Source of the DNA: Mobula birostris
Taxonomy: Eukaryota
Length of the DNA: 64,000 nucleotides
NCBI RefSeq assembly: GCF_030028105.1
Contig: NC_092391.1
Span: forward strand, 27,253,223 to 27,317,222
Direction of reading: 5' to 3'
Shown one piece after another: positions 14,071-61,183 of the stretch. Within the stretch, counting starts at the first letter, position 1. Each line of letters begins with the position of its first letter. The translations under genes and the position numbers were made by a program. Under the pieces are notes generated by a model. The model searched no databases and had not been told where the DNA came from. It was given only the letters and a program-made list of their open reading frames with translations.

Positions 14071-14137
14071 CTAAATCAAGACAACACAGAATGAAAACAC
14101 ATCTATACATCTATCTATCTATCTATCTATACATGCT

Positions 14138-14532
14138 GGCTAAACCAGGTGAGGGTAGCCGACGGGTCTCAAACCCTTGGTGAGATAGGGAGCTGTCTAT
14201 CCCAGCACGTGAAGACAGACTCCGGCGGATTGAGCGGACGAGACCAATGGAAGGTCCAACGGTCAAGGCAGCAGTCTCTGCAAGCGTCGTGGAACGTGTA
14301 GAGCAGGACAAGACACGGAAGACGTCCTGGTCATCCACTGCGCCTAGTCCCATCTCCAGCCGTCTCGACTCTGTCTTGCCACTGGATCCAGATGGGAATT
14401 GGGAAGAGAGAGTGAGGCTGATGCTGTGCAACTCTCCCTCACTTAAATCCAAATCACGCGCTAGTCTCGACACCATCATAATGGTGCGAGGTCCTCATCG
14501 ACGTCAACGATGGACGAACAACAACAACAACA
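14138..14532 (+). mobile_element. 5'-truncated copy of RTE-like non-autonomous retroposon with (CAA)n tail
   Basis: Near-identical to 51353-51737; ends GGACGAACAACAACAACAAC. Confidence 0.85.
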
Positions 14533-14582
14533 TATTATAGATATATATAGAAGACAAAAACACAGAATGAAAACATATATAA

Positions 14583-18715: not shown

Positions 18716-19773
18716 CAGAATTGGCTTGCCTGCAGAAGGCAGAGGGTGGTGGTGGAGGGAGTACATTCAGATTGGAGGATTGTGACTAGTGGTGTCCCAC
18801 AAGGATCTGTTCTGGGACCTCTACTTTTCGTGATTTTTATTAACGACCTGGATGTAGGGGTAGAAGGGTGCGTTGGCAAGTTTGCAGACGACACAAAGGT
18901 TGGTGGTGTTGTAGATAGTGTAGAGGATTGTCGAAGATTGCAAAGAGACATTGATAGGATGCAGAAGTGGGCTGAGAAGTGGCAGATGGATTTCAACCCG
19001 GAGAAGTGTGAGGTGGTACACTTTGGAAGGACAAACTCCAAGGCAGAGTACAAAGTAAATGGCAGGATACTTGGTAGTGTGGAGGAGCAGAGGGATCTGG
19101 GGGTACATGTCCACAGATCCCTGAAAGTTGCCTCACAGGTAGATAGGGTAGTTAAGAAAGCTTATGGGGTGTTAGCTTTCATAAGTCGAGGGATAGAGTT
19201 TAAGAGCCGCAATGTAATGGTGCAGCTCTATAAAACTCTGGTGAGGCCACACTTGGAGTACTGTGTCCAGTTCTGGTCACCTCACTATAGGAAGGATGTG
19301 GAAGCATTGGAAAGGGTACAGAGGAGATTTACCAGGATGCTGCCTGGTTTAGAGAGGATGCATTATGATCAGAGATTAAGGGAGCTAGGGCTTTACTCTT
19401 TGGAGAGAAGGAGGATGAGAGCAGACATGATAGAGGTGTACAAGATATTAAGAGGAATAGATAGAGTGGATAGCCAGCGCTTCTTCCCCAGGGCACCACT
19501 GCTCAATACAAGAGGACATTCCTCTTAACGTAAGGGGTGGGAAGTTCAAGGGGGATATTACAGGAAGGTTTTTTACTCAAGAGAGTGGTTGGTGCGTGGA
19601 ATGCACTGCCTGAGTCAGTGGTGGAGGCAGATACACTAATGAAATTTAAGAGACTACTATACAGGTATATGGAGGAATTTAAGGTGGGGAGTTATATGGG
19701 AGGCAGGCTTTGAGGGTCGGCACAACATTGTGGGCCCAAGGGCCTGTACTGTGCTGTACTATTCTATGTTCTA
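18716..19773 (+). mobile_element. Young 5'-truncated CR1 LINE
   Basis: Open 260-aa RT C-terminus ([36 protein letters not shown]); TTCTATGTTCTA tail. Confidence 0.93.
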
Positions 19774-23149: not shown

Positions 23150-26100
23150 AGTTAGGTTTAAGCAGAGCGGCCATTCTGTGAGTGGGCAAGTTTCAGAGTG
23201 GAGAGCTCAAGCTTTAGCTTATAGAGGCTTTCACGAGAAGACATGAAGGCTGCAGGTAGATTCTTTTGTTCAAATTTTCTTTCTTTCTTATTGCATAGTT
23301 GGAGCTGTGGGGATGCCAGGTATGATAGTGGAATGCTCCAAAGATTTGGTTATTTCTTCAGCAGTTTGATTGGGGCACGACTGCGCAAGCGTGTGGATGT
23401 CAGCCACTTAGAACAGCGAGTAGGGTTTAAAAGGAGACAGCTTTATAGAGTGGGCGTCAGAGTAGAGGGAGACAGAGTAGGAAGGCCTTGGCTCAACAGA
23501 GCTTCGGTGATAACAGGTCGAGGCCAGGTAGGTTAACTGTGTAGAATATAGACAGGAAGTATGTGTGAGAGGCCGGTTTTCTATGCTCGATGTCAGATGT
23601 GGGACACTGGGGAAGACTCCCAGCCTCTTAGACGGCCACATCTGCGCCAGGTGCGTTGAGCTGCAGCTCCTTAGGGACCACGTTAGGGAACTGGAGATGC
23701 AGTTCGATGACCTTCATCTGGTCAGGGAGAGTGAGGAGGTGATAGAGAGGAGCTATAGGCACTGGGGCCTCGGGAGACAGATAAGTGGGTAACAGTCAGG
23801 AGAGGGAAAGGCAAGAGGCAGATACTAGAGAGTACCCTTGTGGCTGTACCCTTTAACAATAAGTACTCCTGTTTGAGGACTTTTGGAGGGGGGGGGGAAC
23901 GGCCTACCTGGGAGAAGCAACAGTGGCCGCACCTCTGGCACAGAGTCTGGCCCGGTGGCTCAGCAAGGCAGGGAAAGGAAGAGGATGGCAGCAGTGATCG
24001 GGGTAGGGTGTCAGATAGGCAATTCTGTGGGCGCAGGAAAGAAGCACGGATGGTAGTTTGCCTCCTAGGTGCCAGGGTCCAGGATGATTCTGATCGTGTC
24101 CATGATATCCTGAAGTGGGAAGGAGAACATCCAGAGGTCATGGTACATATTGGTACCAATGATATAGGCAGGAAAAGGGATGAGGTCCTGAAAGCAGACT
24201 ACAGGGAGTTAGGAAGGATGTTGAGAAGCAGGACCACAAAGCTGGTCATCTCGGGATTACTGCCTGTGCCACGTGACGGTGAGTACAGGAATAGAGTGAG
24301 GTGGAGGATAAATGCGTGGCTGAGGGATTGGAGCAGGGGGCAGGGATTCAGATATCTGAATGATTGGGACCTCTTTTGGGGCAGGTATCACCTGTACAAA
24401 AAGGACGGGTTGCACGTGAATCCCAGGGGGGGCCAATATCCTGGCGGGGAGGTTTGCTAAGGCTATTGGGGAGAGTTTAAACTAGAATTGCTGGGGGGGT
24501 GGGAACCGAACTGAAATGACAGAGGAAGGCTCACAAATAGAGAAAGCTTGGAGACAGCGCGAGAGGAGAATGGGCAGGTGAAGGAGAAGAGATGCGCTCA
24601 GACCGATGGTTTGAGATGTGTCTATTTTAATGCAAGGAGTATTATGAACAAAGCGGATGAGCTTAGAGCGTGGATCAGTACTTGGAGCTATGACGTTGTG
24701 GCCATTACAGAGACTTGGATGGCTCAGGGACCGGAATGGTTACTTCAAGTGCTGGGTTTTAGATGTTTCAGAAGAGACAGGGAAGGAAGCAAAAGAGGTG
24801 GGGGTGTGGCACTGTTGATCAGAGATAGTGTCACAGCTGCAGAAAAGGTGGACGTCACGAAGGGATTGTCTACGGAGTCTCTGTGGGTGGAAGTTAGGAG
24901 AAAGAAGGGATCAATAACTCTACTGGGTGTTTTTTATAGACCACCCAATAGTAACAGTGACATTGAGGAGCAGATAGGGAGGCAGATTCTGGAAAGGTGT
25001 AATAATAACAGGGTTGTTTTGTGGTGGGAGATTATAATTTCCCAAATATCGATTAGCATCTCCCTAGAGCAAGGGGCTTAGATGGGGTGGAGTTTGTTAG
25101 GTGTGTTCAGGAAGGTTTCTTGACACAATATGTAGATAAGCCTACAAGAAGAGCGGCTGTACTTGAACTGGTATTGGGAAACGAACCTGGTCAGGTGTCA
25201 GATCTCTCAGTGGGAGAGCATTTTGGAGATAGTGATCACAATTCTATCTCCTTTACCATAGCCTTGGAGAGGGATAGGAACAGACAAATTAGGAAAGGGT
25301 TTAAATGGAGTAAGGGGAATTATGAGGCTGTCAGGCAAGAACTTAGAAGCATAAATTGGCAACAGATGTTCTCAGCGAAATGTATGGAAGAAATGTGGCA
25401 AATGTTCAGCGGATATTTGTGTAGAGTTGGTATGTTCCAAAGAGACAGGAAAAGGATGGTAGGGTACAGAAACCGTGGTGTACAAAGGCTGCTGTAAATC
25501 TAGTCAAGAAGAGCTGAGAAGAAGAAGAAAAGGTTCAAAAAACTAGATGATAGAGATCTAGGTTATAAGGCTAGCATGAAAGAGCTTAAGAATGAAATTA
25601 GGAGAGAAAGAAGGGGCCATGAGAAGAGCTTAGCGGATAGGATTAAGGAAAATCCCAAGGCGTTCTACAAGTATGTGAAGAGCAAGAGAATAAGACATGA
25701 GAGAATAGGACCAATCAAGTGTGACAGTGGAAAAGTGTGTATGGAACTGGGGGAGATAGCAGAGGTACTTAGTGGACACTTTGCTTCAGTATTCACTACA
25801 GAAAAGGACCTTGGGAATTGTAGGGATGACTTACAGCAGACTGAAAAGCTTGAACATGTAGATATTAAGTGCTGGAGATTTTGGAAAGCATCAAGTTGGA
25901 CAAGTCATCGGGACCGGACAAGATGTACCCCAGGCTACTGTAGGAGGCGAGGGAGGAGATTGCTGAACATCTGGCGATGATCTTTGCATCATCAATGGGG
26001 ACGGGAGAGGTTCTGGAGGATTGGAGGGTTGCGGATGTTGTTCCTTTATTCAAGAAAGGGAGTAGAGATAGCCCAGGAAATTATAGACCAGTGAGTCTTA

Positions 26101-27455
26101 CCTCAGTGGTTGGTAAGTTGATGGAGAAGATCCTGAGAGGCAGGATTTATGAACATTTGGAGAGGCATAATATGATTAGGAATAGTCAGCATGGCTTTGT
26201 GAAAGGCAGGTCGTGCCTTACAAGCCTGATTGTATTTTTTGAGGATGTGACTAAGAACATTGATGAAGGTAGAGCAGTAGATGTAGTGTATATGGACTTT
26301 GGCAAGACATTTGACAAGGTACCCCATGCAAGGCTTATTGAGAAAGTAAGGAGGCATGGGATCCAAGGAGACATTGCTTTGTGGATCAAGAAATGGCTTG
26401 CCCATAGAAGGCAAAGAGTGGTTGTAGATGGATCATATTCTGCATGGAGGTCGGTGACCAGTGGTGTGCCACCGGGATCTGTTCTGGGACCCCTACTCTT
26501 CGTGATTTTGATAAATGACCTGGATGAAGAATAGTAAATTTGCTGATGACACAAAGGTTGGGGGTGTTGTGGATAGTGTAGAGGGCTGCCAGAGGTTACA
26601 GCAGGACATTGATAAGATGCAAGACTGGGCTGAAAAGTGGCAGATGGGAGTTCAACCTAGATAAGTGTGAGGTGGTTCATTTTGGTAGGTCAAATACCAT
26701 GGCAGAATATAGTATTAATGGTAAGACTCTTGGCAGTGTGGAGGATCAGAGGGATCTTGGGGTCTGAGTCCATAGGACACTCAAAGCTGCTGTGCAGGTT
26801 GACTCTGTGGTTAAGAAAGCATATGGTACATTGGCCTTCATCAATCGTGGGATTGAGTTTCGGAGCCGAGAGGTAATGTTGCAGCTGTATAGGACCCTGG
26901 TCAGACCCCGCTTGGAGTACTGTGCTCAGTTCTGGTTGCCTCACTACAGGAAGGATGTGGAAACCATAGAAAGGGTGCAGAGGAGATTTACAAGGATGTT
27001 GCCTGGATTGGGGAGCATGCCTTACAAGAGTAGGTTGAGTGAACTTGGCCTTTTCTCCTTGGAGTGACGGAGGATGAGAGGAGACCTGATAGAGGCTTAT
27101 AAGATGATGAGAGGCATTGATCACGTGTATAGTCAGAGGCTTTTTCCCAGGGCTGAAATGGCAGCATGAGAGGGCACAGTTTTAAGGTGCTTGGAAGTAG
27201 GTACAGAGGAGATGTCAGGGGTAAGTTGTTTTATTTTAAAAAACGCAGTGAGTGGTGAGTGTGTGGAACGGGCTGCTGGCAATGGTGGTGGAGATGGATA
27301 CAATAGGGTCTTTTATTAGAATCCTGGATAGGTACATGGAGCGTAGAAAAATAGAGGTCTATGGATAACCCTAGGTAATTTCTAAGGTAAGGGCATGTTC
27401 GGCTCAGCTTTGTGGGCCGAAGGGCCTGTACTGTGCTGTAGGTTTTTTTTATGTT
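23150..27455 (+). mobile_element. Near full-length, frameshifted CR1 LINE (ORF1 zinc finger + esterase; ORF2 APE endonuclease + RT)
   Basis: HICARC zinc-finger remnant; SGNH-like VHIGTNDIG; YFNARSI/VAITETW/SDHN endonuclease motifs; [11 protein letters not shown] and [11 protein letters not shown] motifs; CR1 tail. Confidence 0.93.
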
Positions 27456-40124: not shown

Positions 40125-43100
40125 TGTGTGTGTGTGTGACCCCTCCCCCAGTGAGGGTCAGTGTGAGTCTGTGACCCCTCCCCCAGTGAGGGTCAGTGTG
40201 TGTGTGGGACCCGTCTCCCAGTGAGGGTCAGTGTGTGTGTGGGACCCGTCTCCCAGTGCGGGTCAGTGTGTGTGTGACCCCTCCCCCAGTGAGGGTCAGT
40301 GTGTGTGGGACCCGTCCCCCAGTGAGGGTCAGTGTGTGTGTGGGACCCGTCCCCCAGTGAGGGTCAGTGTGTGTGGGAAGCACCTCCCAGTGAGGGTCAG
40401 TGTGTATGGGACCCATCCCCCCAGTGAGGGTCAGTGTGTGTGGGACCCCTCCCCCAGTGAGGGTCAGTGTGTGTGTGGGACCCGTCCCCCAGTGAGGGTC
40501 AGTGTGTGTGGGACCCATCCCCCCAGTGAGGGTCAGTGTGTGGGGGACCCGTCTCCAAGTGAGGGTCAGTGTGTGTGTGGGATCCATCTCCCAGTGAGGG
40601 TCAGTGTGTGTGGGACCCGTCCCCCAGTGAGGGTCAGTGTGTGTGGGACCCATCTCCCAGTGAGGGTCAGTGTGTGTGGGACCCCTCCCCCAGTGAGGGT
40701 CAGTGTGTGTGGGACCCATCCCCCCCAGTGAGGGTCAGTGTGTGTGGGACCCGTCTTCCAGTGAGGGTCAGTGTGTGTGTGGGATCCGTCTCCCAGTGAG
40801 GGTCAGTGTGTGTGTGTGTGTGTGTGGGATCCATCCCCCAGTGAGGGTCAGTGTGTGTGGGACCCATCCCCCAGTGAGGGTCAGTGTGTGTGTGTGGGAC
40901 CCATCCCCCAGTGAGGGTCAGTGTGTGTGTGGGACCCGTTCCCCAGTGAGGGTCAGAGTGTGTGTGTGGGACCCATTCCCCAGTAAGGGTCAGTGTGTGT
41001 GTGGGACCCGTCCCCCAGTGAGGGTCAGTGTGTGTGGGATCCATCCCCCCATTGTGAGTCAGTGTGTGCGTGGGATCCATCCCCCCATTGTGAGTCAGTG
41101 TGTGTGGGATCCATCCCCCCATTGTGAGTCAGTGTGTGTGGGATCCATCCCCCCATTGTGAATCAGTGTGTGTGGGACCCCTCCCCCTATTGTGAGTCAG
41201 TGTGTGTGTGGGACCCCTCCCCCTATTGTGAGTCAGTGTGTGTGTGGGAAGCACCTCCCAGTGAGGGTCAGTGTGTGTGGGACCCACCTCCCAGTGACGG
41301 TCAGTGTGTGTGGGACCAGTCCCCCAGTGAGGGTCAGTGTGTGTGGGACCCATCCCCCCAGTGAGGGTCAGTGTGTGTGTGGGATCCGTCTCCCAGTGAG
41401 GGTCAGTGTGTGTGTGTGGGATCCATCCTCCAGTGAGGGTCAGTGTGTGGAGGACCCGTCCCCCAGAGAGGGTCAGTGTGTGTGGGACCCGTCCCCCCAG
41501 TGAGGGTCAGTGTGTGTGTGGGACCAGTCTCCCAGTGAGGGTCAGTGTGTGGGGGACCCGTCTCCCAGTGAGGGTCAGTGTGTGTGTGGGACCCGTCTCC
41601 CAGTGAGGGTCAGTGTGTGGGGGACCCATCTCCCAGTGAGGGTCAGTGTGTGTGTGACCCCTCCCCCAGTGAGGGTCAGTGTGTGTGTGGGACCCGTCCC
41701 CCAGTGAGGGTCAGTGTGTGTGGGATCCGTCTCCCAGTGAGGGTCAGTGTGTGGGGGACCCGTCTCCCAGTGAGGGTCAGTGTGTGTGTGTGGGATCCAT
41801 CCCCCAGTGAGGGTCAGTGTGTGTGGGACCCATCCCCCAGTGAGGGTCAGTGTGTGTGGGACCCATCCCCCAGTGAGGGTCAGTGTGTGGGGGACCCGTC
41901 TCACAGTGAGGGTCAGTGTGTGGGGGACCCGTCTCCCAGTGAGGGTCAGTGTGTGGAGGACCCGTCCCCCAGAGAGGGTCAGTGTGTGTGGGACCCGTCC
42001 CCCCAGTGAGGGTCAGTGTGTGTGGGACCCGTCCCCCCAGTGAGGGTCAGTGTGTGTGTGACCCCTCCCCCAGTGAGGGTCAGTGTGTGTCTGTGACCCC
42101 TCCCCCAGTGAGGGTCAGTGTGTGTGTGGGATCCGTCTCCCAGTGAGGGTCAGTGTGTGTGGGATCTGTCCCCCAGTGAGGGTCAGTTTGTGTGTGGGAC
42201 CCATCCCCCAGTGAGGGTCAGTGTGTGTGGGACCCGTCCCCCAGTGAGGGTCAGTGTGTGTGGGACCCATCCCCCAGTGAGGGTCAGTGTGTGGGGGACC
42301 CGTCTCCCAGTGAGGGTCAGTGTGTGGGGGACCCGTCCCCCCAGTGAGGGTCAGTGTGTGTGGGATCTGTCTCCCAGTGAGGGTCAGTGTGTGGGGGACC
42401 GGTCTCCCAGTGAGGGTCAGTGTTTGTGGGACCCATCCCCCCAGTGAGGGTCAGTGTGTGTGTGTCCCATCCCCCAGTGAGGGTCAGTGTGTGTGGGACC
42501 CGTCTCCCAGTGAGGGTCAGTGTGTGTGGGACCCGTCCCCCCAGTGAGGGTCAGTGTGTGTGGGACCGATCCCCCCAGTGAGGGTCAGTGTTTGTGGGAC
42601 CGATCCCCCCAGTGAGGGACAGTGTGTGTGGGACCAGTCCCCCAGTGAGGGTCAGTGTGTGTGTGGGACCAACCGCCCAGTGAGGGTCAGTGTGGGAAGG
42701 ACCTGTCCCCCAGAGAGGGTCAGTGTGTGTGGGACCCGTCCCCCAGTGAGGGTCAGTGCGTGTGTGATCCATCCCCCCATTGTGAGTCAGTGTGTGTGGG
42801 ATCCATCCCCCCATTGTGAGTCAGTGTGTGTGGGATCCATCCCCCCATTGTGAGTCAGTGTGTGTGTGGGATCCATCCCCCCATTGTGAGTCACTGTGTG
42901 TGGGACCCCTCCCCCCATTGTGAGTCAGTGTGTGTGGGACCCCTCCCCCCATTGTGAGTCAGTGTGTGTGGGATCCATCCCCCGATTGTGAGTCAGTGTG
43001 TGTGGGATCCATCCCCCGATTGTGAGTCAGTGTGTGTGGGAAGCACCTCCCAGTGAGGGTCAGTGTGGGAAGGACCTGTCCCCCAGAGAGGGTCAGTGTG

Positions 43101-45435
43101 TGTGGGACCCGTCCCCCAGTGAGGGTCAGTGTGTGTGGGACCCGTCCCCCCAGTGAGGGTCAGTGTGTGTGGGACCGATCCCCCCAGTGAGGGTCAGTGT
43201 TTGTGGGACCGATCCCCCCAGTGAGGGACAGTGTGTGTGGGACCCCTCCCCCAGTGAGGGTCAGTGTGTGTGTGGGATCCATCCCCCCATTGTGAGTCAG
43301 TGTGTGTGTGGGAAGCACCTCCCAGTGAGGGTCAGTGTGTGGGGGACCCGTCCCCCCCAGTGAGGGTCAGTGTGTGTGTGGGACCAACCTCCCAGTGAGG
43401 GTCAGTGTGGGAAGGACCTGTCCCCCAGAGAGGGTCAGTGTGTGTGGGACCCGTCCCCCCAGTGAGGGTCAGTGTGTGTGGGACCTGTCCCCCCAGTGAG
43501 GGTCAGTGTTTGTGGGACCGATCCCCCCAGAGAGGGTCAGTGTGTGTGGGACCCGTCCCCCCAGTGAGGGTCAGTGTGTGTGGGACCTGTCCCCCCAGCG
43601 AGGGTCAGTGTTTGTGGGACCGATCCCCCCAGTGAGGGACAGTGTGTGTGGGACCCACCTCCCAGTGAGGGTCAGTGTGTGTGGGAGCCGTCCCCCCAGT
43701 GAGGGTCAGTGTGTGTGGGACCCCTCCCCCAGTGACGGTCAGTGTGTGTGGGACCCCTCCCCCAGTGAGGGTCAGTGTGTGTGGGATCCATCCCCCAGTG
43801 AGGGTCAGTGTGTGTGGGACCCATCCCCCAGTGAGGGTCAGTGTGTGGGGGACCCGTCTCCCAGTGAGGGTCAGTGTGTGGGGGACCCGTCCCCCCAGTG
43901 AGGGTCAGTGTGTGTGGGATCTGTCTCCCAGTGAGGGTCAGTGTGTGGGGGACCGGTCTCCCAGTGAGGGTCAGTGTTTGTGGGACCCATCCCCCCAGTG
44001 AGGGTCAGTGTGTGTGTGTCCCATCCCCCAGTGAGGGTCAGTGTGTGTGGGACCCGTCTCCCAGTGAGGGTCAGTGTGTGTGGGACCCGTCCCCCCAGTG
44101 AGGGTCAGTGTGTGTGGGACCGATCCCCCCAGTGAGGGTCAGTGTTTGTGGGACCGATCCCCCCAGTGAGGGACAGTGTGTGTGGGACCAGTCCCCCAGT
44201 GAGGGTCAGTGTGTGTGTGGGACCAACCGCCCAGTGAGGGTCAGTGTGGGAAGGACCTGTCCCCCAGAGAGGGTCAGTGTGTGTGGGACCCGTCCCCCCA
44301 GTGAGGGTCAGTGTTTGTGGGACCGATCCCCCCAGTGAGGGACAGTGTGTGTGGGACCCCTCCCCCAGTGAGGGTCAGTGTGTGTGTGGGATCCATCCCC
44401 CCATTGTGAGTCAGTGTGTGTGTGGGAAGCACCTCCCAGTGAGGGTCAGTGTGTGGGGGACCCGTCCCCCCCAGTGAGGGTCAGTGTGTGTGTGGGACCA
44501 ACCTCCCAGTGAGGGTCAGTGTGGGAAGGACCTGTCCCCCAGAGAGGGTCAGTGTGTGTGGGACCCGTCCCCCAGTGAGGGTCAGTGTGTGTGGGACCTG
44601 TCCCCCCAGTGAGGGTCAGTGTTTGTGGGACCGATCCCCCCAGAGAGGGTCAGTGTGTGTGGGACCCGTCCCCCAGTGAGGGTCAGTGTGTGTGGGACCT
44701 GTCCCCCCAGTGAGGGTCAGTGTTTGTGGGACCGATCCCCCCAGAGAGGGTCAGTGTGTGTGGGACCCGTCCCCCAGTGAGGGTCAGTGTGTGTGGGACC
44801 TGTCCCCCAGTGAGGGTCAGTGTGTGTGGGACCCGTCCCCCCAGTGAGGGTCAGTGTGTGTGGGACCTGTCCCCCCAGTGAGGGTCAGTGTTTGTGGGAC
44901 CGATCCCCCCAGTGAGGGACAGTGTGTGTGGGACCCACCTCCCAGTGAGGGTCAGTGTGTGTGGGAGCCGTCCCCCCAGTGAGGGTCAGTGTGTGTGGGA
45001 CCCCTCCCCCAGTGACGGTCAGTGTGTGTGGGACCCCTCCCCCAGTGAGGGTCAGTGTGTGTGGGATCCATCCCCCAGTGAGGGTCAGTGTGTGTGGGAC
45101 CCATCCCCCAGTGAGGGTCAGTGTGTGGGGGACCCGTCTCCCAGTGAGGGTCAGTGTGTGGGGGACCGGTCTCCCAGTGAGGGTCAGTGTTTGTGGGGGA
45201 CCCGTTTCCCCAGTGAGGGTCAGTGTGTGGGGGACCGGTCTCCCAGTGAGGGTCAGTGTTTGTGGGGGACCCGTTTCCCCAGTGAGGGTCAGTGTGTGTG
45301 GGGGACCTGTTTCCCCAGTGAGGGTCAGTGTGTGTGTGTCCCATCCCCCAGTGAGGGTCAGTGTGTGTGGGGGACCCGTTTCCCCAGTGAGGGTCAGTGT
45401 GTGTGGGGGACCTGTCTCCCCAGTGAGGGTCGGTG
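40125..45435. repeat. ~5.3-kb minisatellite, ~31-33-bp unit CAGTGAGGGTCAGTGTGTGTGGGACCCGTCCCC
   Basis: Directly visible tandem array in DNLZ intron 2. Confidence 0.98.
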
Positions 45436-45439
45436 TGAG

Positions 45440-45835
45440 GGACAGCTCACTCATCTTTGGTCCCCACAGACACTCAGCTCTCAGTTGTGACTCCAAGTAG
45501 CTCGAAGCTGTTGCATGTGATAGGGGCTTCATACCCCAGGGAGAAAGGGACATGCCCATCCTCGCGTGCAGAGTCAACTCTGGCAGATTGGGTGGATGAG
45601 ATCTACAGTGAGATCAACGGTCAGGAAGGTGGCTCTGCAATGCCCCATGGACAGCGAGTGGCATGATGAGGAACAGAAGTAAACGTGGTCATCTGCTACA
45701 ACCAAGGAAGGTGCTTGTTTGCATCACTGGACCTGGATTTCTGAGACAAAGTGGAACTGCCCTAGTGCAACAGCTTTTCCACTTTAAAACTCCTGCGCAC
45801 ATGTTTCCTGTCATCGGACATGACGGACGCCCACA
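45440..45835 (+). mobile_element. Older diverged relative of the 51186-51737 retroposon
   Basis: Shares TTTGGTCCCCAC..CACTCAGCTCTCA..TGTG.CTCC..GTAGCT and CAACGGTCA.GAAGG.GG.CTCTGCAA blocks. Confidence 0.6.
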
Positions 45836-49858: not shown

Positions 49859-51185
49859 AAATCTTTCACTTCTTTTATTTTTGTTTATTTATTTACTGAG
49901 AATCGTTTCAGAATAGCCTCTTGCAGCCACGCCACCCAGCAATCCCCCATTTAATCCTAGCCTAATTGTGGTGCAATTTACAATGACTAATTAACCTATC
50001 AATCGGTTTATGTCCCTGGATTGTGGGAGGAAACTGAAGCAAACCCATGGGGAGAACATACAGGCAGCAGTGGGAATTGAACCCATGTCGCTGGTACTGT
50101 AAACTGGTGTGCTAACCACTACGCCACTGTACAACTTCTCTGCAGTATTTCATATCCTTAGTAGCCAAAAATCAATTGAACTCTGAAGAATCTTTGTGAT
50201 TGAACCTCCACAATCCCGTTGGATATATCTACTTCCCATTGGGTAAGACATTTCTTTTCATCTCTTTAACCCCTATGAAGACTGTGAACCATGGTCCTAG
50301 GCACATCAACCAGAGGAAATATCCTCTGCATCAACCCTGTCAAACCTATGAAGAATTTTGCATGTTTCAATGAGATTATATGTCATTTGTATAAATTCTA
50401 GAGAATATAAACCCAGACTGCCTAATCTCTCCTCAAACAACAAATCTGCTACCCAGGAATGAATCTAGTAAACCATTACTGTTTTCCCCATTAGCCTTCC
50501 TTAAATAGAGAGACCTATCTTGCAGGAATGCTCTTACCAGTGCACTATAAAGTTGGGGTAAGATTTCAAATCCTCTTGAAATTAAGCACAATACCACATA
50601 ACTTTATAATTGTTTGCTTCACCTGCATGTTAACTCTCAGTGTCAATTGTACAAGAAACATTTAGACGTTCCTCTACACCCAAAGTCCCCCCCAGCTTCC
50701 CCCTCCCGCGCGTAAGCAGCAGTGAGCAATGATTCCCCCCTCCCCCCACCAGAAATAAACACGCATCGGTACCATCGCCGAGCCCAAGCGTGTGCTAAGC
50801 AATAGCAAAGATACAGACCAAAGTTACCCCAATGGCTTTGCATTTCATCCGATATTCGACAAACCACAGGTTCTCTCTCTCCCTGGCAAGGGGGAGGGAG
50901 GTGTCTCCCATTCTCACAGTGAGCGGGATGTTATTTGCACATTATATTCCATGTGCAATTTCATTGCTATTTTATTAAGTCTGTTTCTATCCCTTGAAGC
51001 CTCTTTGTATCCTCCTTACAACCTACACTGACACCTAGTAGAACATTACCACCCTTTGGCCAATGATGTTGTTCCAGCCTTTTAACCTACTTTGAGATCA
51101 ATCTAACTCTTCCCTCCCATATTGCCCTCCATTTTTTTCTTAATCCTTGTGCCTGTGTAACAGTAACCATCTCTTGTAAGTGTAT

Positions 51186-51368
51186 GGGGTGTCAGGGAGG
51201 GGTAGCACCTGTGGTGGGGGAACATGTCGCGTCCTTTTCAAGGCAGTTAGTCCACCTTTGGTCCCCACCTGGCACTCAGCTCTCACCTGTGGCTCCCTGT
51301 AGCTGTTTGCATGCGACAGCGGCCACACCCCGGGCAACGGCTCCGACAAGCCGGCTAAACCAGGTGAG
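51186..51368 (+). ncRNA. Candidate HDV-like self-cleaving ribozyme
   Basis: P1 GGGGUGU/ACACCCC; P2 CUCACCUGU/AC(C)AGGUGAG; P3 GGC/GCC; P1.1 CC/GG; GCAA-P4(CGGC/GCCG)-GCUAA with catalytic-position C at 51355. Confidence 0.6.
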
Positions 51369-51737
51369 GGTAGCCGATGGGTCTCAAACCCTCGGTGAGA
51401 TAGGGAGTTGTCTATCCCAGCACGTGAAGACAGACTCCGGCGGATTGAGCGGATGAGACCAGTGGAAGGTCCAACAGTCAAGAAGGCGGTCTCTGCAAGC
51501 GTCGTGGAACGTGTAGAGCAGGACAAGACACAGAAGACGTCCTGGTCATCCACTGCGCCTAGTCCCATCTCCAGCCGTCTAGACGCTGTCTTGCCACTGG
51601 ATCCAGATGGGAATTGGGAAGAGAGAGTGAGGCTGACGCTGCACAACTCTCCCTCACTTAAATCCAAATCACGCGCTAGTCTCGACACCATCATAATGGT
51701 GTCGAGGTCCTCATCGACGTCAATGATGGACGAACAA
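51186..51737 (+). mobile_element. Apparently full-length non-coding RTE-like retroposon with 5' HDV-like ribozyme fold
   Basis: 3' ~385 bp near-identical to 14138-14532; the 5' part folds into the HDV double pseudoknot. Confidence 0.8.
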
Positions 51738-52339
51738 GAGAACCATCAAGAAAACTGGTTATGCAGTACTGTGCAAAAGTCTTGGGCATATATATTTAGG
51801 GCCTCAGTTGGAGGGTTGATTTCAATATTGGGTACAGCACTTTCAGAAGGATAGCTTGACTCTACACATATTGTGTTGTTGGATTATGAATAAGATTATA
51901 AGAAACATAAGCAAACTTAGGCTATTAGGCCCTTTGTACATCCTTCTGTATTCAACAAAACCATCACCCGATCTCCATTCCCCTTGTACCAGCCATGATT
52001 CCCCTCTCCCTGTCCCCTTCCCACCCTCAGTCCACAATAGAGACCCATACCAGAATCAGGTTTATCACCACTCTCATATGTCATGTTTTTTTTGTGGCAG
52101 AAGTGCAATGCAATGCATAAAATTATTGCAATACTGTTTGGATTCCTGGATGTTAGGAAGTTTAGGCAAAAAAAAGCAGGTGTTTCATTTCATCAGAAAG
52201 TTCAGATGAGAAGGGGAGTGGTTGATGGAGATGGATGATCTCTTGAAAATGCTGAGTCTTTCCTTCTGCCATCAGATTTCTGAACATTGCATTAAATCAT
52301 AAACAGTATTTCATTATTCCTTTTACTTTGCACAGTTTA

Positions 52340-52726
52340 CAGTACCGTGTAAAAGCCTTAGACAGCAGAGATTTTTATATGGTTTCAGATGGTATGGCCT
52401 CCACAGGGCCCTGATCTCAACATCATCGAGACTGTCTGGGATCACCTGGAGAGACAGAAGCAAGTGAGACAGCCAGAGTCTGCAGAAGAACTGTGGCAAG
52501 TTCTCCAAGATGCTTGGAACAACCTACCAGCTGATTTTCATATAAAACTGCATGACAGTGTACCTAAGAGAATTGATGCGGTTTTAAGGGCAAAAGATGG
52601 TCACACCTTTGATTTGATTTAGTTTTTTTTAACTGTATTGTATTTTTTGATATTTAGAAACTGTCAATTTCATTATTTTGAAAGCATCTTTACAGATTTT
52701 TTGCTGAAGACTTTTTCACAGGACTG
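52340..52726 (+). mobile_element. Internally deleted Tc1 element
   Basis: WPPQGPDLNIIETVWDHLE transposase C-terminus; CAGTACCGTG... / ...CACAGGACTG ends. Confidence 0.8.
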
Positions 52727-53024
52727 CATTTATTCCGTAATTCACAGTATTTTAAATTATTTGCACTAATCTGCTGCCACGAAGCAACACATTTGATATA
52801 TAAGTGGGTGATAATAAACCCGATTCTGATTGTGGAAGATGGGGAAGGGGGGATGTGCATGTGGCAGAATTTTGCTGAAGTTGGTGGAAATTAAGAAGGC
52901 TGGTTTGTTGAATGTGGAGGCAGGTGGAGTGGAAGGACAGGATCTTGGGAACTATCTGTGGGAGGAGAAAGGGTTAGAGCAGATATAGGGGAAAGAAATG
53001 AGACAGTCAAGGTCACTTTCAACT

Positions 53025-57820: not shown

Positions 57821-57894
57821 TGCAGATGATGTAAACAGAATATTTGCTATCTGAGTTTAACGGATGACATTTATCCACCAAGATCGCTGATGCA
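57821..57894 (+). ncRNA. SNORD24: SNORD24 (U24) box C/D snoRNA
   Basis: TGCA terminal stem; box C ATGATGT; guide AGAATATTTGCTAT + CTGA (D'); guide CCACCAAGATCG + CTGA (D). Confidence 0.93.
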
Positions 57895-58009
57895 CTCTTG
57901 AGTCCCTCTACCAGCAGCAGCCTGTGAAACTAACACTTGCTTCCTGCCCCCACATTCTCTGCTCCACTCCGCCCAAAATATCCTGGTTAATGACGATTCA
58001 TTTTTGCAG

Positions 58010-58150
58010 CCACCCAGCTCTTCAAATTGGCACACAAGTACAGGCCTGAGACTAAACAAGAGAAGAAGCAAAGGTTGCTGGCCCGGGCTGAGCAGAAGGC
58101 GGCTGGGAAAGCTGACGCTCCCACAAAGAGACCTGCTGTTCTCAGAGCCG
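58010..58150 (+). CDS. RPL7A: RPL7A exon 4
   Basis: [47 protein letters not shown]. Confidence 0.97.
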
Positions 58151-58792
58151 GTAAGATGGGTTCACTGCTTGCTTAACTTGAACTGGCGACGCAGACTCAA
58201 TGGGCCAGGTGGCTGCTATATCTTATGGTCTAACTTGTAGTTGACATTGGATGTAGAAGTGAATGGCATTCTTGACTAAGGTGTGAGAGGATTGACACTA
58301 GTTCACTTGCCTTTCAGTTAGAATAGTTAGAGGGATATTATTGACTAGTATTGGGTATGGTGATGCGATTTCAGGGAGTTGCTTACAGTTAATAGCCATT
58401 GTGTACCTTTTATGGTGGACCTGACTTAATTCTTTGTAAGCTCAGCTTCTCGGGCAGCTTGTCTATTATTCCCTGACAATTCCAGTGCACTCTTCCGCTG
58501 GTTGTCTTCAGTGAGCTTTCTCATTTATTTGTTTTTGTGCCCTAATCTGTATTACTGTGTTCAACCACCACCTCTGTGTTTCTGGACTTGCTCTGGTTGA
58601 TTTTCTTAATTTTGTTAGAATCCCTCCCACACCTGTCTCTGGTTCTCTAAATCCACCAACTGCAGTGCATTTACTATTGATGACTTGGGGTTGTATTCCT
58701 AGGCTCTGCATTGGTGCTGAGGAAAGTTTACTGTTTTAAGTTTTGTTGCAGTCTCTCTCCAATCTCATTCTTGTGATAACAAATTGGCTAAT

Positions 58793-58870
58793 GTTGCAAT
58801 GATGTTTGAATTTCTTCACCTGAAGTTCAGCATGTAGATCAAACAAACGAGCTTTTTAACACTGAGCAAC
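58793..58870 (+). ncRNA. SNORD36: SNORD36 (U36) copy, intron 4
   Basis: GTTGC/GCAAC stem; box C; GAATTTCTTCAC-CTGA; GAGCTTTTTAACA-CTGA. Confidence 0.92.
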
Positions 58871-58961
58871 AAGCCATGGGTCTTCTCTCTCGCCTTCCTT
58901 GTGGATTGAGGATTTTTATTTTCTAAGGGATTTGGGGATACAAGCAGCAGTTAAATGTATA

Positions 58962-59532
58962 CGAGGGGTGATTGATAAGTTCATGGCCTACAGTAGAAGG
59001 AATCAATCTTAGAAAACCTAGCACATTTATTTTTCAACATAGTCCCCTCCTACGTTTACACACCTAGTCCAGTGGTCGTGGAGCATACGTATCTTGGACC
59101 TCCAGAAAGTGTCCACAGCAGGGGTGATTGATAGGTTCGTGGCCTAAGGTAGGAGACTAGTTATACAGCTCTTGTTACATGCATGTGCAGTTCAACTCTT
59201 TGAGTGATTATGCAGAAAGTTTGAAGTTAACAACTCATCTCCTTCTACCTTAGGCCACGAACTTATCAATCACCCCAATGAGTTATTAACTTCAAACTTT
59301 CTGCATAATCACGTGCATGTAACGAGAGCTGTATAATTCATCTTCTACCTTAGGCTACGAACTTATCAATCACCCCTGCTGTGGACACTTCCTGGAGGTC
59401 CATGATCCGTATGCTCCATGACCATTGGACTAAGTATGTAAAAGTATGAGGGGACTATGTTGAAAAATAAATGTGCTAGGTTTTCTAAAATTGACTCCTA
59501 CCTTAGGCCACAAACTTGACAATCATCTCTCG
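58962..59532. mobile_element. Palindromic mariner-like MITE with nested TIR copies
   Basis: TA-flanked; CGAGGGGTGATTGATAAGTT / AACTTGACAATCATCTCTCG ends; the two halves are reverse complements. Confidence 0.88.
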
Positions 59533-59632
59533 TAACTAATTGGTGCAGAAAGACTGGAGGATTTTGTTGTATACCTGATTCTGTAAGTGTTGCCTTGTTT
59601 GTCTCAAAGGCCATTATTCTGTCTTTGTACAG

Positions 59633-59712
59633 GTGTGAATACTGTCACCACATTGGTGGAGAATAAGAAAGCTCAGCTGGTGATTATTGCGCATGATGTT
59701 GATCCTATTGAG
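59633..59712 (+). CDS. RPL7A: RPL7A exon 5
   Basis: [27 protein letters not shown]. Confidence 0.97.
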
Positions 59713-60107
59713 GTAAGCTGTGCACTCCTTGCTCCCTAAATCTAGACCCAATTTGGGCGCCAGGCATAACTATACTGATGACTTAATGCTGCTGGAGATT
59801 TTCCCATCTGAGGTGATGGCATAGCTGTTTCAGAGATGGGCGATCTTTCATTATTTACGGAGGGGCTTTCTTCGATCATCAAGGCTGCTCTGCCCTACAC
59901 AAAGGATGATCTTACTCCTTGTGTCTCTATTTGTTGAGACTGGGATGAAGATGTTCTCAGTTTTGTTCCTTGTATTTGACCAAGCCAAATTCATAGATTG
60001 TGCATACTGGGAGCTGGAAGGTCATCATTGTTGGTGTGGCATGGGGGCTTGACTGGGTCATCAAAATCTCTGCTTCCCTATTAATCTGTTATGCATCAGC
60101 CTGGCTA

Positions 60108-60185
60108 ATGCGATGATGAATTTGAATTTCTTCACCTGAAGTTCAGTGTGTAGATCAGAGAAACGAGCTTTTTAACCCTGAGCAT
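60108..60185 (+). ncRNA. SNORD36: SNORD36 (U36) copy, intron 5
   Basis: ATGC/GCAT stem; box C ATGATGA; both guides followed by CTGA. Confidence 0.92.
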
Positions 60186-60619
60186 CAAGCCAAGGCTGTG
60201 CTGTATATCTGATTCAGAGGGACTTTCCCTTTCTCCTTAAACCTTATTTGTTCAGTGTTCCTTCCAGTAGTTTGGAATGAGAGAATTTTCAATTGAAATA
60301 AATCCCAGACACTTGTAGCAATGTGTGGGTGAAATGAGAAGTGTCAGTGTGTCAACTTGGTGCTTAAATTCCAAATTCCCACATGGTTCCTGCCTTCCCT
60401 GTTCCCAATTTCTTGTTCCTTTATTGCTAGGCATTTCGCTGCCTGAGCCTTGGGTGTAGCTTAAGCTTAATAGCTGAGTTCACTTTAAAACACACCAATT
60501 ACGCTAAAGGGTTTGACTTTAATTTGATAATTTTCTGTGAAATAGAATCTTTTGTATAAGAGTTGATTAGTCAAGCCAGTACTAATCTCCATTTTCCACT
60601 TCCCTGATGCCCCCTCCAG

Positions 60620-60750
60620 TTGGTTGTGTTCCTGCCTGCCCTCTGCCGTAAGATGGGAGTTCCTTATTGCATTGTCAAAGGCAAAGCCAGACTGGGGCGT
60701 CTTGTGCACAGGAAGACTGCCAGCTGCCTCGCTTTTGCACAACTAAACCC
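60620..60750 (+). CDS. RPL7A: RPL7A exon 6
   Basis: [43 protein letters not shown]. Confidence 0.97.
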
Positions 60751-61109
60751 GTGAGTAACCTGTCTATTACTGACGATTGGGAGTGGTGTGTCACTTGATC
60801 TGTTTACTGTGTTTTCATGTTGAAATGTTCAAGGGGGGTGGCGTGTCAGTCTCAACACTGAGGGGCATCTACATGTTGATCAGTCAGCAAGAGCTGATCC
60901 AATAGTATTTCCAGCATTTGGTGTGATGGTGGGGTAGAGTCCTTGCAGTTCTTGACCTATTGGTAATGAACTAAAAATGAATATTGAAAACAATGCCAGA
61001 AGGCTTCTTTGAGGGCACCGGCTCTTTGGGGTTTGATTCTGCTCTCTGTTGGCATATAGTACATTAAACCAGGGTGTACAGCTACTTCCTCTAGCTGGGC
61101 TGAACCAAG

Positions 61110-61183
61110 AATGCAATGATGTGCGATGAATTTCTTCACCTGAATAACCATGTGGTATTTTGAGCTTTTTAACCCTGAGCATT
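61110..61183 (+). ncRNA. SNORD36: SNORD36 (U36) copy, intron 6
   Basis: AATGC/GCATT stem plus outer TGAACCAA/TTGGTTCA; both guides followed by CTGA. Confidence 0.92.

What the first reader, a model, noticed from the sequence alone, without database searches (positions are those of the whole stretch)
51186..51368. HDV-like ribozyme with a hairpin-expanded L3 at the 5' end of a non-coding retroposon
Seen in sequence: all helices of the HDV nested double pseudoknot, in the right order. P1 is GGGGUGU (51186-92)/ACACCCC (51325-31). J1/2 is ~90 nt. P2 is CUCACCUGU (51282-90)/AC(C)AGGUGAG (51359-68) with one bulge. P3 is GGC (51291-93)/GCC (51322-24), and L3 starts UCC, pairing with GG (51332-33) as P1.1. 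Then come GCAA, P4 CGGC/GCCG and J4/2 G-C-UAA, mirroring the HDV genomic GGGCAAC...GGCGAA core. Unusual: L3 is ~28 nt with its own GCUGU/ACAGC hairpin instead of the canonical ~7 nt. Established: HDV-like ribozymes process 5' ends of R2 and RTE retroelements. Inference: this is a young ribozyme-headed, (CAA)n-tailed non-autonomous retroposon family, possibly with a new L3 variant.
Basis: partly seen in the sequence, partly recalled or inferred. Interest (0 to 1): 0.82.

Follow-up and report, generated by a model that had tools for sequence, protein, structure and literature searches.

The report
Delta-type ribozyme head of ray retroposon
The first 183 bases of a very abundant short jumping element in a ray genome can fold like the self-cutting hepatitis-delta RNA, a known way for such elements to trim their own front end, but here with an unusual extra hairpin in the catalytic loop and with cutting still untested.

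Summary

**For a ribozyme:**
- A relaxed HDV descriptor finds only this site at the stricter levels in the window. At the as-found level it occurs in 0 of 910 shuffles.
- The fold sits at the 5' edge of a high-copy, ORF-less, (CAA)n-tailed retroposon family. The family is shared by several related species, with Mobula protein hits.
- The core is better conserved between subfamilies than J1/2 or the downstream body: 28/33 versus 21/45 residues, p = 0.0008.

**Against or unresolved:**
- Rfam gives no ribozyme hit even at E <= 10.
- No covariation could be read.
- L3 is 28 nt, an 8-nt strand plus a 19-nt hairpin, against the usual 7-8.
- Shared sequence runs 1-11 nt upstream of G51186. 11 of 15 other readable copies carry a second tandem 9-nt unit.
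- Cleavage is untested.

**Verdict:** probably a real HDV-like ribozyme, and a new L3 variant of a known kind. This scan already noted the same family repeatedly on other DNA of this genome.

The parts
51178..51185 (+). Degenerate upstream copy of the 9-nt terminal unit (reads K-C-M in frame with 51186). It is part of the element in this lineage and lies 5' of the proposed cut site.
   Evidence: Shared with P0007 (K-C-L), P0030 (C-M before two units) and partly P0024. Contig pieces reach 51180, 51182 and 51183.
51186..51192 (+). P1 5' strand GGGGUGU. The proposed cleavage is 5' of G51186.
   Evidence: 7 Watson-Crick pairs with 51325-51331. Summed depth rises from 4.8e4 to 8.2e5 between bins 51154-51187 and 51188-51221 in X1.
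51193..51281 (+). J1/2, 89 nt. 51193-51271 folds alone into a long irregular hairpin, a peripheral domain of the P1.2 type.
   Evidence: Folded alone it gives -32.0 kcal/mol. The best-supported family variants 51211, 51241, 51245 and 51249 fall here. It is the least conserved segment between subfamilies.
51279..51290 (+).
   Evidence: Duplex with 51359-51371 gives -18.8 kcal/mol. The scan counted 12 pairs with one bulge.
51291..51293 (+). P3 5' strand GGC.
   Evidence: Pairs with GCC 51322-51324. It also forms in the unconstrained fold.
51294..51301 (+). Single-stranded part of L3, UCCCUGUA. C51295-C51296 are available for P1.1, and G51299 sits at loop position 6.
   Evidence: Family variants at 51297 and 51298 fall at loop positions 4-5 only.
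51302..51320 (+). Extra hairpin inserted between the L3 strand and P3 3' strand: 6-bp stem 51302-51307 / 51315-51320 with a 7-nt loop.
   Evidence: L3 folded alone gives -6.6 kcal/mol. Its translation S-C-L-H-A-T-A is identical in the other subfamily. Variant 51314 lies in the loop.
51322..51324 (+). P3 3' strand GCC.
51325..51331 (+). P1 3' strand ACACCCC.
51332..51337 (+). P1.1 3' side (G51332-G51333), then J1/4 GCAA.
51338..51353 (+). P4 hairpin, CGGC(U)/(A)GCCG.
   Evidence: Variants 51343 (family majority T) and 51349 (A>G keeps a U-G pair) lie in the loop or closing pair.
51354..51358 (+). J4/2 G-C-U-A-A, with C51355 as the candidate catalytic cytosine.
   Evidence: Fits C-N-R-A directly before P2. 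In the other subfamily only the N position differs, L to Q.
51359..51371 (+). P2 3' strand.
51372..51745 (+). Body and 3' end of the retroposon copy, with a degenerate (CAA)n-type tail from about 51738.
   Evidence: 94.9% identical to 14131-14521 over 392 nt. High summed depth continues to bin 51698-51731.
14131..14533 (+). Second copy in the window. It is 5'-truncated inside P4 (equivalent to about 51346) and has a clean (CAA)n tail.
   Evidence: A 17-nt target duplication sits at 14083-14099 / 14559-14575.
45440..45790 (+). Old, diverged relative of the family. It lacks about 59 nt covering P4, J4/2 and P2 3' strand, or P3' to P2' depending on the alignment.
   Evidence: nhmmer E = 3e-20 and alignment A1.

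Best explanation
Window 51186-51368 is the head of one copy (about 51178-51745) of a very abundant, young, ORF-less, (CAA)n-tailed retroposon family of a ray genome.

**What the head looks like.** It has every part of the HDV-type nested double pseudoknot, with two departures:
- J1/2 is an 89-nt domain that folds on itself.
- A 19-nt hairpin (51302-51320) sits between an otherwise ordinary 8-nt L3 strand and the P3 3' strand.

**Most likely function.** The family head is a self-cleaving ribozyme. It would cut 5' of the first G of a GGGGUGU P1 strand (G51186 here), with C51355 as the catalytic base. That frees the element RNA from read-through transcripts before a LINE reverse transcriptase copies it. 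The same strategy is described for R2, R4, Baggins, RTE and L1Tc elements.

**Shown versus inferred.**
- Shown: the pairings; their rarity in shuffles; the position at the family's 5' edge; stronger conservation of the core than of J1/2 and the downstream body.
- Inferred: cleavage itself, the cut site, and tolerance of the L3 insertion.

**This particular copy.** It keeps the core of the family majority. It is probably silent: it has a copy-specific competing pairing, and no RNA evidence was obtained.
For: **Specificity of the fold**
- All helices are in the right order.
- This is the sole hit of the relaxed descriptor at the stricter levels on both strands of the window. The as-found level occurs in 0 of 910 shuffles.
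- The pseudoknotted fold is energetically competitive. Its nested part gives -63.0 and the P2 duplex -18.8 kcal/mol, against -83.7 for the best nested fold of 51186-51372.

**Position**
- Summed contig depth jumps about 17-fold in X1 between bins ending 51187 and starting 51188, and stays high to about 51731.
- In all 15 other copies whose junction is readable, the P1 unit lies within one or two 9-nt units of where likeness between copies ends.

**Conservation**
- Comparing c51 with the other subfamily in frame 51187, the core 51282-51380 keeps 28 of 33 residues. J1/2 plus downstream keeps 21 of 45. Fisher p = 0.0008.
- All 9 best-supported variant positions inside 51186-51368 fall in J1/2, L3 positions 4-5, the hairpin loop or the P4 loop. 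The chance of that is 0.024.
- c51 differs from the family majority at 51211, 51245, 51298 and 51343 only, none in a helix or in J4/2.

**Precedent in papers**
- HDV-like ribozymes at the 5' ends of RTE, Baggins, R2, R4 and L1Tc elements, and in some SINEs: passages of PMC6765202 and PMC3774820.
- J1/2 of 216-498 nt in silkmoth R2.
- Structured J1/2 plus a 12-bp P2 in the Agam-2 ribozymes: PMC4908430, part 1.
Against: - No Rfam family matches. At gathering level only snoRNAs were found. At E <= 10 on 51000-51900 there were 3 unrelated weak hits.
- L3 is 28 nt. The papers read give 7 nt (CPEB3, antigenomic HDV, R2) or 8 nt (genomic HDV), and L3 forms the active site.
- The first P1 pair is G-C, not the G-U wobble that I recall as usual.
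- The plain fold is not unusually stable, z = -1.08. The best nested fold uses 51187-51196 with 51268-51277 instead of P1.
- In this copy 51193-51199 can pair perfectly with 51293-51299, covering the P1.1 cytosines.
- No covariation is available. The family is young, and the copies readable at protein level show only uncompensated decay: P0003 breaks G51189-C51328, and P0008 has two P2 mismatches.
- A P2 change in the other subfamily (A51362 to T) has a partner at a silent codon position, so compensation cannot be read.
- 5' ends do not sit exactly at G51186. T precedes the first unit in 13 of 15 copies, and 11 of 15 carry a second tandem unit.
- c51 shares 51178-51185 with P0007 and P0030. 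RNAs of that lineage therefore began upstream of the proposed cut site.
- The old relative at 45.4 kb lacks the catalytic segment.
- No RNA evidence: the runs labelled RNA are guesses and are contigs.
Confidence: 0.62

Rival explanations
1. Relic of a ribozyme. The head descends from a genuine HDV-like ribozyme of a LINE, but the hairpin inserted in L3 (or other changes) has inactivated it. The 5' end of this family would then be set by something else, for example transcription initiation at an internal promoter. The fold may persist for another use, such as protein binding or translation, as has been discussed for R2.
For: - L3 is 28 nt against 7-8 nt in every ribozyme described in the papers read.
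- Shared sequence and tandem units lie upstream of the P1 used here. A degenerate upstream unit is inherited in c51, P0007 and P0030.
- Both units of two-unit copies could serve as P1, yet 11 of 15 copies keep both.
- PMC6765202 (passages) reports R2 protein binding and IRES-like roles of the fold.
Against: - The core, including the inserted hairpin, is the best conserved part between subfamilies. An inactive relic should decay like its surroundings.
- No promoter evidence was gathered.
Confidence: 0.17
2. Chance resemblance. This would be a GC-rich structured 5' region of a retroposon that happens to satisfy a loosened HDV descriptor, and that was noticed because thousands of copies repeat it.
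For: - By my rough arithmetic from the descriptor (not a tool result), the as-found level should occur about once per thousand windows. That is consistent with 0 of 910, so a multi-gigabase genome would hold tens of chance hits.
- Rfam is silent.
- The fold is not unusually stable.
- There is no covariation.
Against: - A chance hit would also have to fall within about 10 nt of a retroposon family's 5' edge.
- It would have to show core-specific conservation.
- It would have to match the delta core beyond the descriptor: L3 starting U-C-C with a G at position 6, GCAA after P1.1, and a P4 hairpin placed exactly between J1/4 and J4/2.
Confidence: 0.14
3. Protein-coding constraint. The conserved stretch would be part of a short real ORF (frame 51187, 90 aa here) of the element, and the conservation would reflect the protein rather than RNA structure.
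For: - The frame is open in c51 (51184-51456).
- It is open in the other subfamily, with ORFs of 82-157 aa.
Against: - No Pfam family matches.
- The opposite strand is open for 184 aa over the same DNA, so open frames are cheap in this composition.
- The proteins were found because they are open, which is a selection bias.
- Conservation stops at the 3' end of P2, not at the end of the ORF.
Confidence: 0.04

Closest known systems
HDV-like ribozymes at the 5' ends of RTE-type and Baggins non-LTR retrotransposons, including the mosquito drz-Agam-2 group. Ruminski et al. 2011 is cited in PMC3774820 and PMC6765202 but is not held here. The assignment of Agam-2 to RTE is recalled.
   Same: - The ribozyme sits at the extreme 5' end of a promoter-less retroelement.
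- P1 is 7 bp.
- J1/2 is large and structured, and P2 extends to about 12 bp (PMC4908430, part 1).
- The proposed role is release from co-transcripts.
   Different: - L3 carries a 19-nt hairpin.
- The host is a cartilaginous fish.
- The element is a roughly 560-nt non-coding derivative.
- The terminal 9-nt unit is often tandemly doubled.
- Activity is untested.
R2 / R4 element ribozymes (PMC3774820).
   Same: - Double pseudoknot with a long J1/2 (216-498 nt in silkmoths).
- Variable P4.
- Few conserved positions apart from the catalytic C and L3 residues.
- 5' junctions are variable and sometimes carry short duplications.
   Different: - R2 is site-specific in rDNA and often cleaves upstream in 28S.
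- Its P1.1, P3 and L3 together span 15 nt, so its L3 is far shorter than here.
- This family is dispersed.
L1Tc HDV-like ribozyme of Trypanosoma cruzi (passages of PMC6765202). Its non-autonomous partner NARTc sharing the head is recalled, not read.
   Same: A ribozyme head on a dispersed LINE, and (recalled) on its short non-coding derivative.
   Different: A protozoan host with polycistronic transcription, and no L3 insertion is known to me.
CPEB3 ribozyme, the known vertebrate HDV-like ribozyme (bioRxiv 10.1101/2022.09.22.508989, passages).
   Same: A vertebrate HDV-like fold with P1.1 formed between L3 and J1/4.
   Different: It is a single conserved intronic locus with a 7-nt L3 and a short J1/2, and it is not part of a mobile element.
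Hammerhead- or twister-bearing SINE-like elements: schistosome SINEs, retrozymes and Penelope-like elements (passages of PMC6765202; abstract listing of PMC8501958).
   Same: A non-autonomous repeat whose RNA is processed by its own small ribozyme.
   Different: A different ribozyme class and a different mechanism of spread.

Membership tests
HDV-like self-cleaving ribozyme | Nested double pseudoknot with strands in the order P1, P2, P3, L3, P3', P1', P1.1, P4, J4/2, P2'. | tested here: met
   Coordinates were read. It is the only descriptor hit in the window at the strict level.
HDV-like self-cleaving ribozyme | P1 of 6-7 bp starting at the cleavage site, and P2 of at least 5 bp (PMC3774820, section 16). 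| tested here: met
   P1 has 7 Watson-Crick pairs. P2 has 9-12 pairs with one bulge.
HDV-like self-cleaving ribozyme | 3-bp P3 closing a short L3 of 7-8 nt that forms the active site. | tested here: not met
   P3 is 3 bp, but L3 is 28 nt: an 8-nt strand, a 19-nt hairpin and 1 nt. The papers read give 7 or 8 nt.
HDV-like self-cleaving ribozyme | P1.1 of one or two pairs between L3 and the bases right after P1'. | tested here: met
   C51295-C51296 can pair with G51332-G51333. This is potential pairing only.
HDV-like self-cleaving ribozyme | Catalytic cytosine in J4/2 just before the P2 3' strand. | tested here: met
   C51355 lies in G-C-U-A-A directly before P2'. It is kept in the other subfamily, which reads S/G-R-Q/L.
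HDV-like self-cleaving ribozyme | G-U wobble as the first P1 pair. Recalled as usual, not stated as defining in the papers read. | tested here: not met
   The pair G51186-C51331 is Watson-Crick. The P0015 cluster reads W for R at this codon, which implies a U at 51331.
HDV-like self-cleaving ribozyme | Match to a curated covariance model (Rfam HDV, CPEB3 or drz families). | tested here: not met
   No match at gathering score or at E <= 10. The long L3 and J1/2 would depress any score.
HDV-like self-cleaving ribozyme | Compensatory changes that support the helices. | tested here: inconclusive
   No full-length DNA copies beyond the window could be fetched. Variation seen lies outside the helices or is unreadable at silent codon positions.
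HDV-like self-cleaving ribozyme | Site-specific Mg-dependent self-cleavage giving a 5'-hydroxyl product. | not testable with these tools
   No assay is available. The runs are contigs, which cannot show RNA ends.
Ribozyme-terminated non-LTR retroposon (RTE-type, non-autonomous) | Ribozyme cleavage site coincides with the element's 5' end. | tested here: inconclusive
   The family edge lies within 1-11 nt of G51186. T stands at -1 in 13 of 15 copies, a second unit is present in 11 of 15, and c51 shares 51178-51185 with other copies.
Ribozyme-terminated non-LTR retroposon (RTE-type, non-autonomous) | Retroposon hallmarks: 3' simple-repeat tail, 5' truncation and target-site duplication. | tested here: met
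   The copy at 14131-14533 is 5'-truncated, ends in (CAA)n and has a 17-nt duplication. For c51 the best candidate duplication is 7 nt, and 263 of 2000 shuffles do as well.
Ribozyme-terminated non-LTR retroposon (RTE-type, non-autonomous) | Head and tail shared with an autonomous RTE LINE. | tested here: inconclusive
   - There is no partner in the window. The LINE at 23.8-26.5 kb has a GDSL esterase ORF and no likeness to the element.
- Residues 33-86 of the + ORF match short mollusc and unnamed proteins. UniRef names one of them an endonuclease/exonuclease/phosphatase protein.
- P0014 gives only E = 0.12 to Exo_endo_phos_2.
- No long RT protein was hit.

The most novel reading that the evidence does not exclude
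Ray genomes carry, in what may be on the order of ten thousand copies, an active HDV-like ribozyme of a new structural variant. A stable hairpin would be tolerated at the junction of the catalytic loop L3 and P3. The P1 substrate strand would be tandemly doubled at the element's tip, giving alternative cut sites that add or remove a 9-nt unit at each round of retroposition.
Probability: 0.4. Interest if true: 0.62.

Novelty: new variant of a known kind. Interest (0 to 1): 0.5.

Why it matters
- **Structure.** If the head cleaves, the delta-ribozyme active site would be shown to accept a large insertion at the L3/P3 junction. Motif descriptors and the Rfam models exclude that region from variation, so other natural members may be missed for the same reason.
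- **Biology.** It would also document ribozyme-dependent processing of a highly successful non-autonomous retroposon in a vertebrate.
- **Mechanism.** The doubled P1 unit offers a simple handle for asking how cleavage-site choice shapes 5' junctions.
- **If it does not cleave.** It becomes a useful example of a convincing-looking false positive, or of a relic.

Tried and rejected
**Other head types**
- tRNA-, 5S- or 7SL-type SINE head: ARAGORN found nothing in 50000-53000, and Rfam at E <= 10 found no such RNA. Rejected.

**Alternative cut sites**
- I listed all 6-7-bp helices whose 5' strand starts at 51170-51195.
- A one-base shift (51185-51191 with 51326-51332) is possible but leaves A51325 between P3 and P1. 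Rejected.

**Fetching more DNA copies**
- A metagenome scan with a 21-letter pattern gave 9 loci, all chance matches of 22-27 nt or less.
- I therefore read other copies only through database ORF translations. This leaves third codon positions unknown. The sample is mostly one young subfamily of one unnamed ENA assembly.

**RTE origin through protein likeness**
- The + ORF hit 14 short proteins and no long RT protein.
- Pfam found nothing at 0.01 for six of them. At E <= 10, P0014 gave only a weak 0.12 hit.
- The PDB sequence search of P0014 was blank.

**Other checks**
- Origin of the 33-bp satellite from the element head: weak, since 16 of 500 shuffles score as well.
- Target duplication of c51: not significant.

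**Literature**
- Searches for a natural L3 insertion or for elasmobranch ribozymes found no such report. Only listings and the passages named in the report were read.
- Ruminski 2011, Webb 2009 and Webb & Luptak 2011 are not held.
- Supplements were not opened. Figure S2 of PMC3774820 and Table S1 of PMC4908430 may show L3 variants that I could not see.

**Limits of the read data**
- Read laying listed only the best-supported differences, with 104 rows hidden. Absence of listed variants in the helices is therefore not proof that there are none.
Full report
**Setting**

The window is vertebrate DNA.
- Rfam at gathering level finds SNORD24 and three SNORD36 copies at 57.8-61.2 kb on the plus strand.
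- A minus-strand exon at 13852-14070 matches Pfam Med22 (7e-18).
- An ORF laid over the element finds relatives in Mobula birostris and Mobula hypostoma. Earlier notes of this scan call the genome a ray.

**The observation**

- P1: 51186-51192 with 51325-51331, seven Watson-Crick pairs.
- P2: 51282-51290 with 51359-51368, one bulged C.
- P3: 51291-51293 with 51322-51324.
- P1.1: C51295-C51296 with G51332-G51333.
- P4: 51338-51341 with 51350-51353.
- J4/2: G-C-U-A-A at 51354-51358, directly before P2'.

Two refinements:
- P2 can extend to 11-12 pairs.
- L3 divides into an 8-nt single strand (51294-51301), a 6-bp hairpin with a 7-nt loop (51302-51320), and G51321. The insertion therefore sits at the 3' end of a loop strand of ordinary length, not in its middle. 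From memory, the ordinary loop starts U-C-C and has a conserved G at its sixth position. Both hold here, and the last loop position is dispensable in crystallised constructs. This is recall, not a test.

**Is it more than chance?**

I wrote a descriptor with the usual constraints but with L3 allowed up to 35 nt and J1/2 up to 100 nt.
- The candidate is the only hit on either strand of the window at the strict and as-found levels. One other hit appears at the loosest level.
- In 910 dinucleotide shuffles, the as-found level occurred in 0 shuffles, the strict level in 40, and the loosest level 0.91 times per shuffle.
- My own rough arithmetic puts the as-found rate near one per thousand windows. 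The motif alone would therefore recur by chance in a genome of gigabases, and the descriptor was written after the fact.
- The plain nested fold is not unusually stable: z = -1.08, and 31 of 200 shuffles fold as well.
- The pseudoknotted topology is energetically competitive. Its nested part gives -63.0 and the P2 duplex -18.8 kcal/mol, against -83.7 for the best nested fold.
- Rfam finds no ribozyme family here even at E <= 10. With a 28-nt L3 and an 89-nt J1/2 this is expected and says little.

**What the element is**

- A second copy lies at 14131-14533. It is 94.9% identical over 392 nt, 5'-truncated inside P4, and ends in (CAA)n. It is flanked by a 17-nt target duplication, with about 25-30 nt of filler at both junctions.
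- An old relative lies at about 45440-45790 and lacks about 59 nt that include the catalytic segment.
- Contigs of four public runs laid at 80% likeness show very high summed depth from bin 51188-51221 to bin 51698-51731. In X1 this is 3e5 to 1.8e6, against 57-190 in outer flank bins. The step at the 5' side is about 17-fold. The tool warns that this is no copy number, so "order of ten thousand copies" is only a rough reading.
- In X1, 1783 of 17437 laid contigs are at least 99% alike.
- 20 of 24 listed runs, from ten coded organisms, hold part of the stretch.
- None of the three element ORFs scanned has a Pfam family, and no tRNA-like head is found.
- c51 sits inside another repeat (51052-51153) and next to a Tc1-like terminal repeat (51760-51799).

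**Conservation**

The best-supported differences between c51 and the laid contigs inside 51186-51368 are at nine positions: 51211, 51241, 51245, 51249, 51297, 51298, 51314, 51343 and 51349.
- All nine lie in J1/2, L3 positions 4-5, the hairpin loop, or the P4 loop or closing pair. The chance of that is 0.024.
- 104 further rows were hidden, so this is suggestive only.

A second subfamily is readable through database ORFs in frame 51187.
- Between it and c51, the core (P2 through P2') keeps 28 of 33 residues.
- J1/2 plus the downstream stretch keeps 21 of 45. Fisher p = 0.0008.
- The five core differences map, by single-base changes, to:
  - 51298, L3 position 5;
  - 51343, the P4 loop;
  - 51349, which keeps a U-G pair;
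  - 51356, the free position after the catalytic C;
  - 51362, in P2. Its partner 51288 is a silent codon position, so compensation cannot be read.
- The inserted hairpin is unchanged at this level.
- Single decayed copies show uncompensated breaks (P0003, P0008), as expected for dead copies.
- No true covariation test was possible.

**The 5' end**

Among 15 database ORFs that read through the junction:
- 11 have a second tandem copy of the 9-nt unit (G-C-Q in this frame) in front of the unit that forms P1 in c51.
- 4 have one unit.
- The residue before the first unit is L, M, V or I in 13 of 15, which puts a T at position -1.

c51 itself has a degenerate unit at 51178-51186 (K-C-M).
- It shares this with P0007 (K-C-L), P0030 (C-M before two units) and partly P0024.
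- Three listed contig pieces reach 51180, 51182 and 51183.

Three consequences follow:
- The P1 motif is always at the tip of the element.
- Shared sequence extends 1-11 nt beyond G51186.
- In the c51 lineage the retroposed RNA began upstream of the proposed cut site.

Two explanations are open:
- The reverse transcriptase adds an untemplated base, and sometimes re-primes on the G run to duplicate the terminal 9 nt. In that case both units start with a P1-competent sequence.
- The 5' end is set by transcription initiation rather than by cleavage.

PMC3774820 (abstract and discussion passages) reports variable 5' junctions, untemplated bases and short duplications for ribozyme-processed R2. That makes the first explanation plausible but not shown.

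**Relation to LINEs**

- No partner LINE is in the window. The LINE at 23.8-26.5 kb carries GDSL esterase, endonuclease and RT ORFs and has no likeness to the element.
- The + ORF 51408-51851 hits 14 short proteins in a library of 1.84 billion, and none is a long RT protein.
- Two of the ten looked up are mollusc proteins. UniRef names one an endonuclease/exonuclease/phosphatase domain protein.
- P0014 continues into a stretch with a weak Exo_endo_phos_2 match, E = 0.12 and below the cut-off.
- This hints that nt 51504-51665 derive from the 5' part of an endonuclease-bearing LINE spread over distant animals.
- The RTE label rests on that hint, on the (CAA)n tail, on my recollection of RTE tails, and on earlier unchecked notes of this scan.

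**Comparison with what is known**

- Passages of PMC6765202 state that HDV-like ribozymes occur in R2, L1Tc, Baggins and RTE elements, which lack their own promoters. They also state that some LINEs and SINEs use hammerhead or HDV-like ribozymes.
- PMC3774820 gives P1 of 6-7 bp, P2 of at least 5 bp, a variable P4, and a J1/4 of 0-2 nt. It states that the 15 nt of P1.1, P3 and L3 are highly conserved, and gives J1/2 of 216-498 nt in silkmoths.
- PMC4908430 (part 1 of 4 read) shows that a structured J1/2 with a 12-bp P2 activates the Agam-2 ribozymes.
- The CPEB3 structure preprint (passages) gives 7-nt L3 loops, and 8 nt in genomic HDV.
- Against these, the present head is ordinary in P1, P2, P3, P1.1, P4, J4/2 and its long structured J1/2. 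It is unusual only in the L3 hairpin, the G-C first pair and the doubled terminal unit.
- My searches found no report of a natural L3 hairpin or of such ribozymes in cartilaginous fishes. These cover open-access text only, and supplements were closed.

**Verdict**

The most likely reading (0.62) is a genuine HDV-like self-cleaving head of a non-autonomous retroposon, a new structural variant of a known kind.

The rivals are:
- an inactivated relic (0.17);
- a chance resemblance (0.14);
- coding constraint (0.04).

This copy keeps the family-majority core. It has a copy-specific 7-bp competitor of L3 and P1.1, and no RNA evidence was obtained.

The same family was already noted many times by this scan on other DNA of this genome. 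Two follow-ups reached a similar verdict. Those notes were leads, not evidence.

Noticed in passing
window 40128-45437: A 33-bp satellite of about 156 units (86-87% matches) ends exactly where the old diverged copy of the retroposon begins (about 45440). Likeness of the unit to the element's head is weak: 16 of 500 shuffles score as well.
   Followed up: partly
window 57821-61183 (+): SNORD24 and three SNORD36 copies lie in a row, the arrangement of an RPL7A-type snoRNA host gene.
   Followed up: no
window 13852-14070 (-): An exon encodes the C-terminal half of the Med22 domain (Pfam 7e-18). The truncated retroposon copy at 14131-14533 lies just beside it on the opposite strand.
   Followed up: partly
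window 23840-26531 (+) and 18746-19525 (+): A decayed LINE with GDSL-esterase, endonuclease and reverse-transcriptase ORFs, plus a separate RT fragment. Neither is related to the element's tail.
   Followed up: partly
window 51052-51153 and 51760-51799: c51 is nested in other repeats: a high-copy repeat upstream and a Tc1-like terminal repeat downstream. One contig in each of three runs joins 51136 directly to 51760.
   Followed up: no
window 14083-14099 and 14559-14575: The truncated copy has a 17-nt target duplication. It is separated from the element by about 25-30 nt of AT-rich or microsatellite filler on both sides.
   Followed up: partly
window 51504-51665 (+ frame of ORF 51408-51851): This stretch has translated likeness (about 54-60% over about 50-65 residues) to short proteins of molluscs (Elysia marginata, Dreissena polymorpha) and to unnamed Logan and ENA proteins. 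Part of the element body is therefore shared with LINE-like elements of distant animals.
   Followed up: partly
window 51282-51293 (-): Two Mobula gene models stop matching the element right after the residues E-P-Q. On the minus strand this DNA reads like a splice donor, so copies seem to be exonised in annotated genes. This is an inference.
   Followed up: no
I did not look at it.
   Followed up: no
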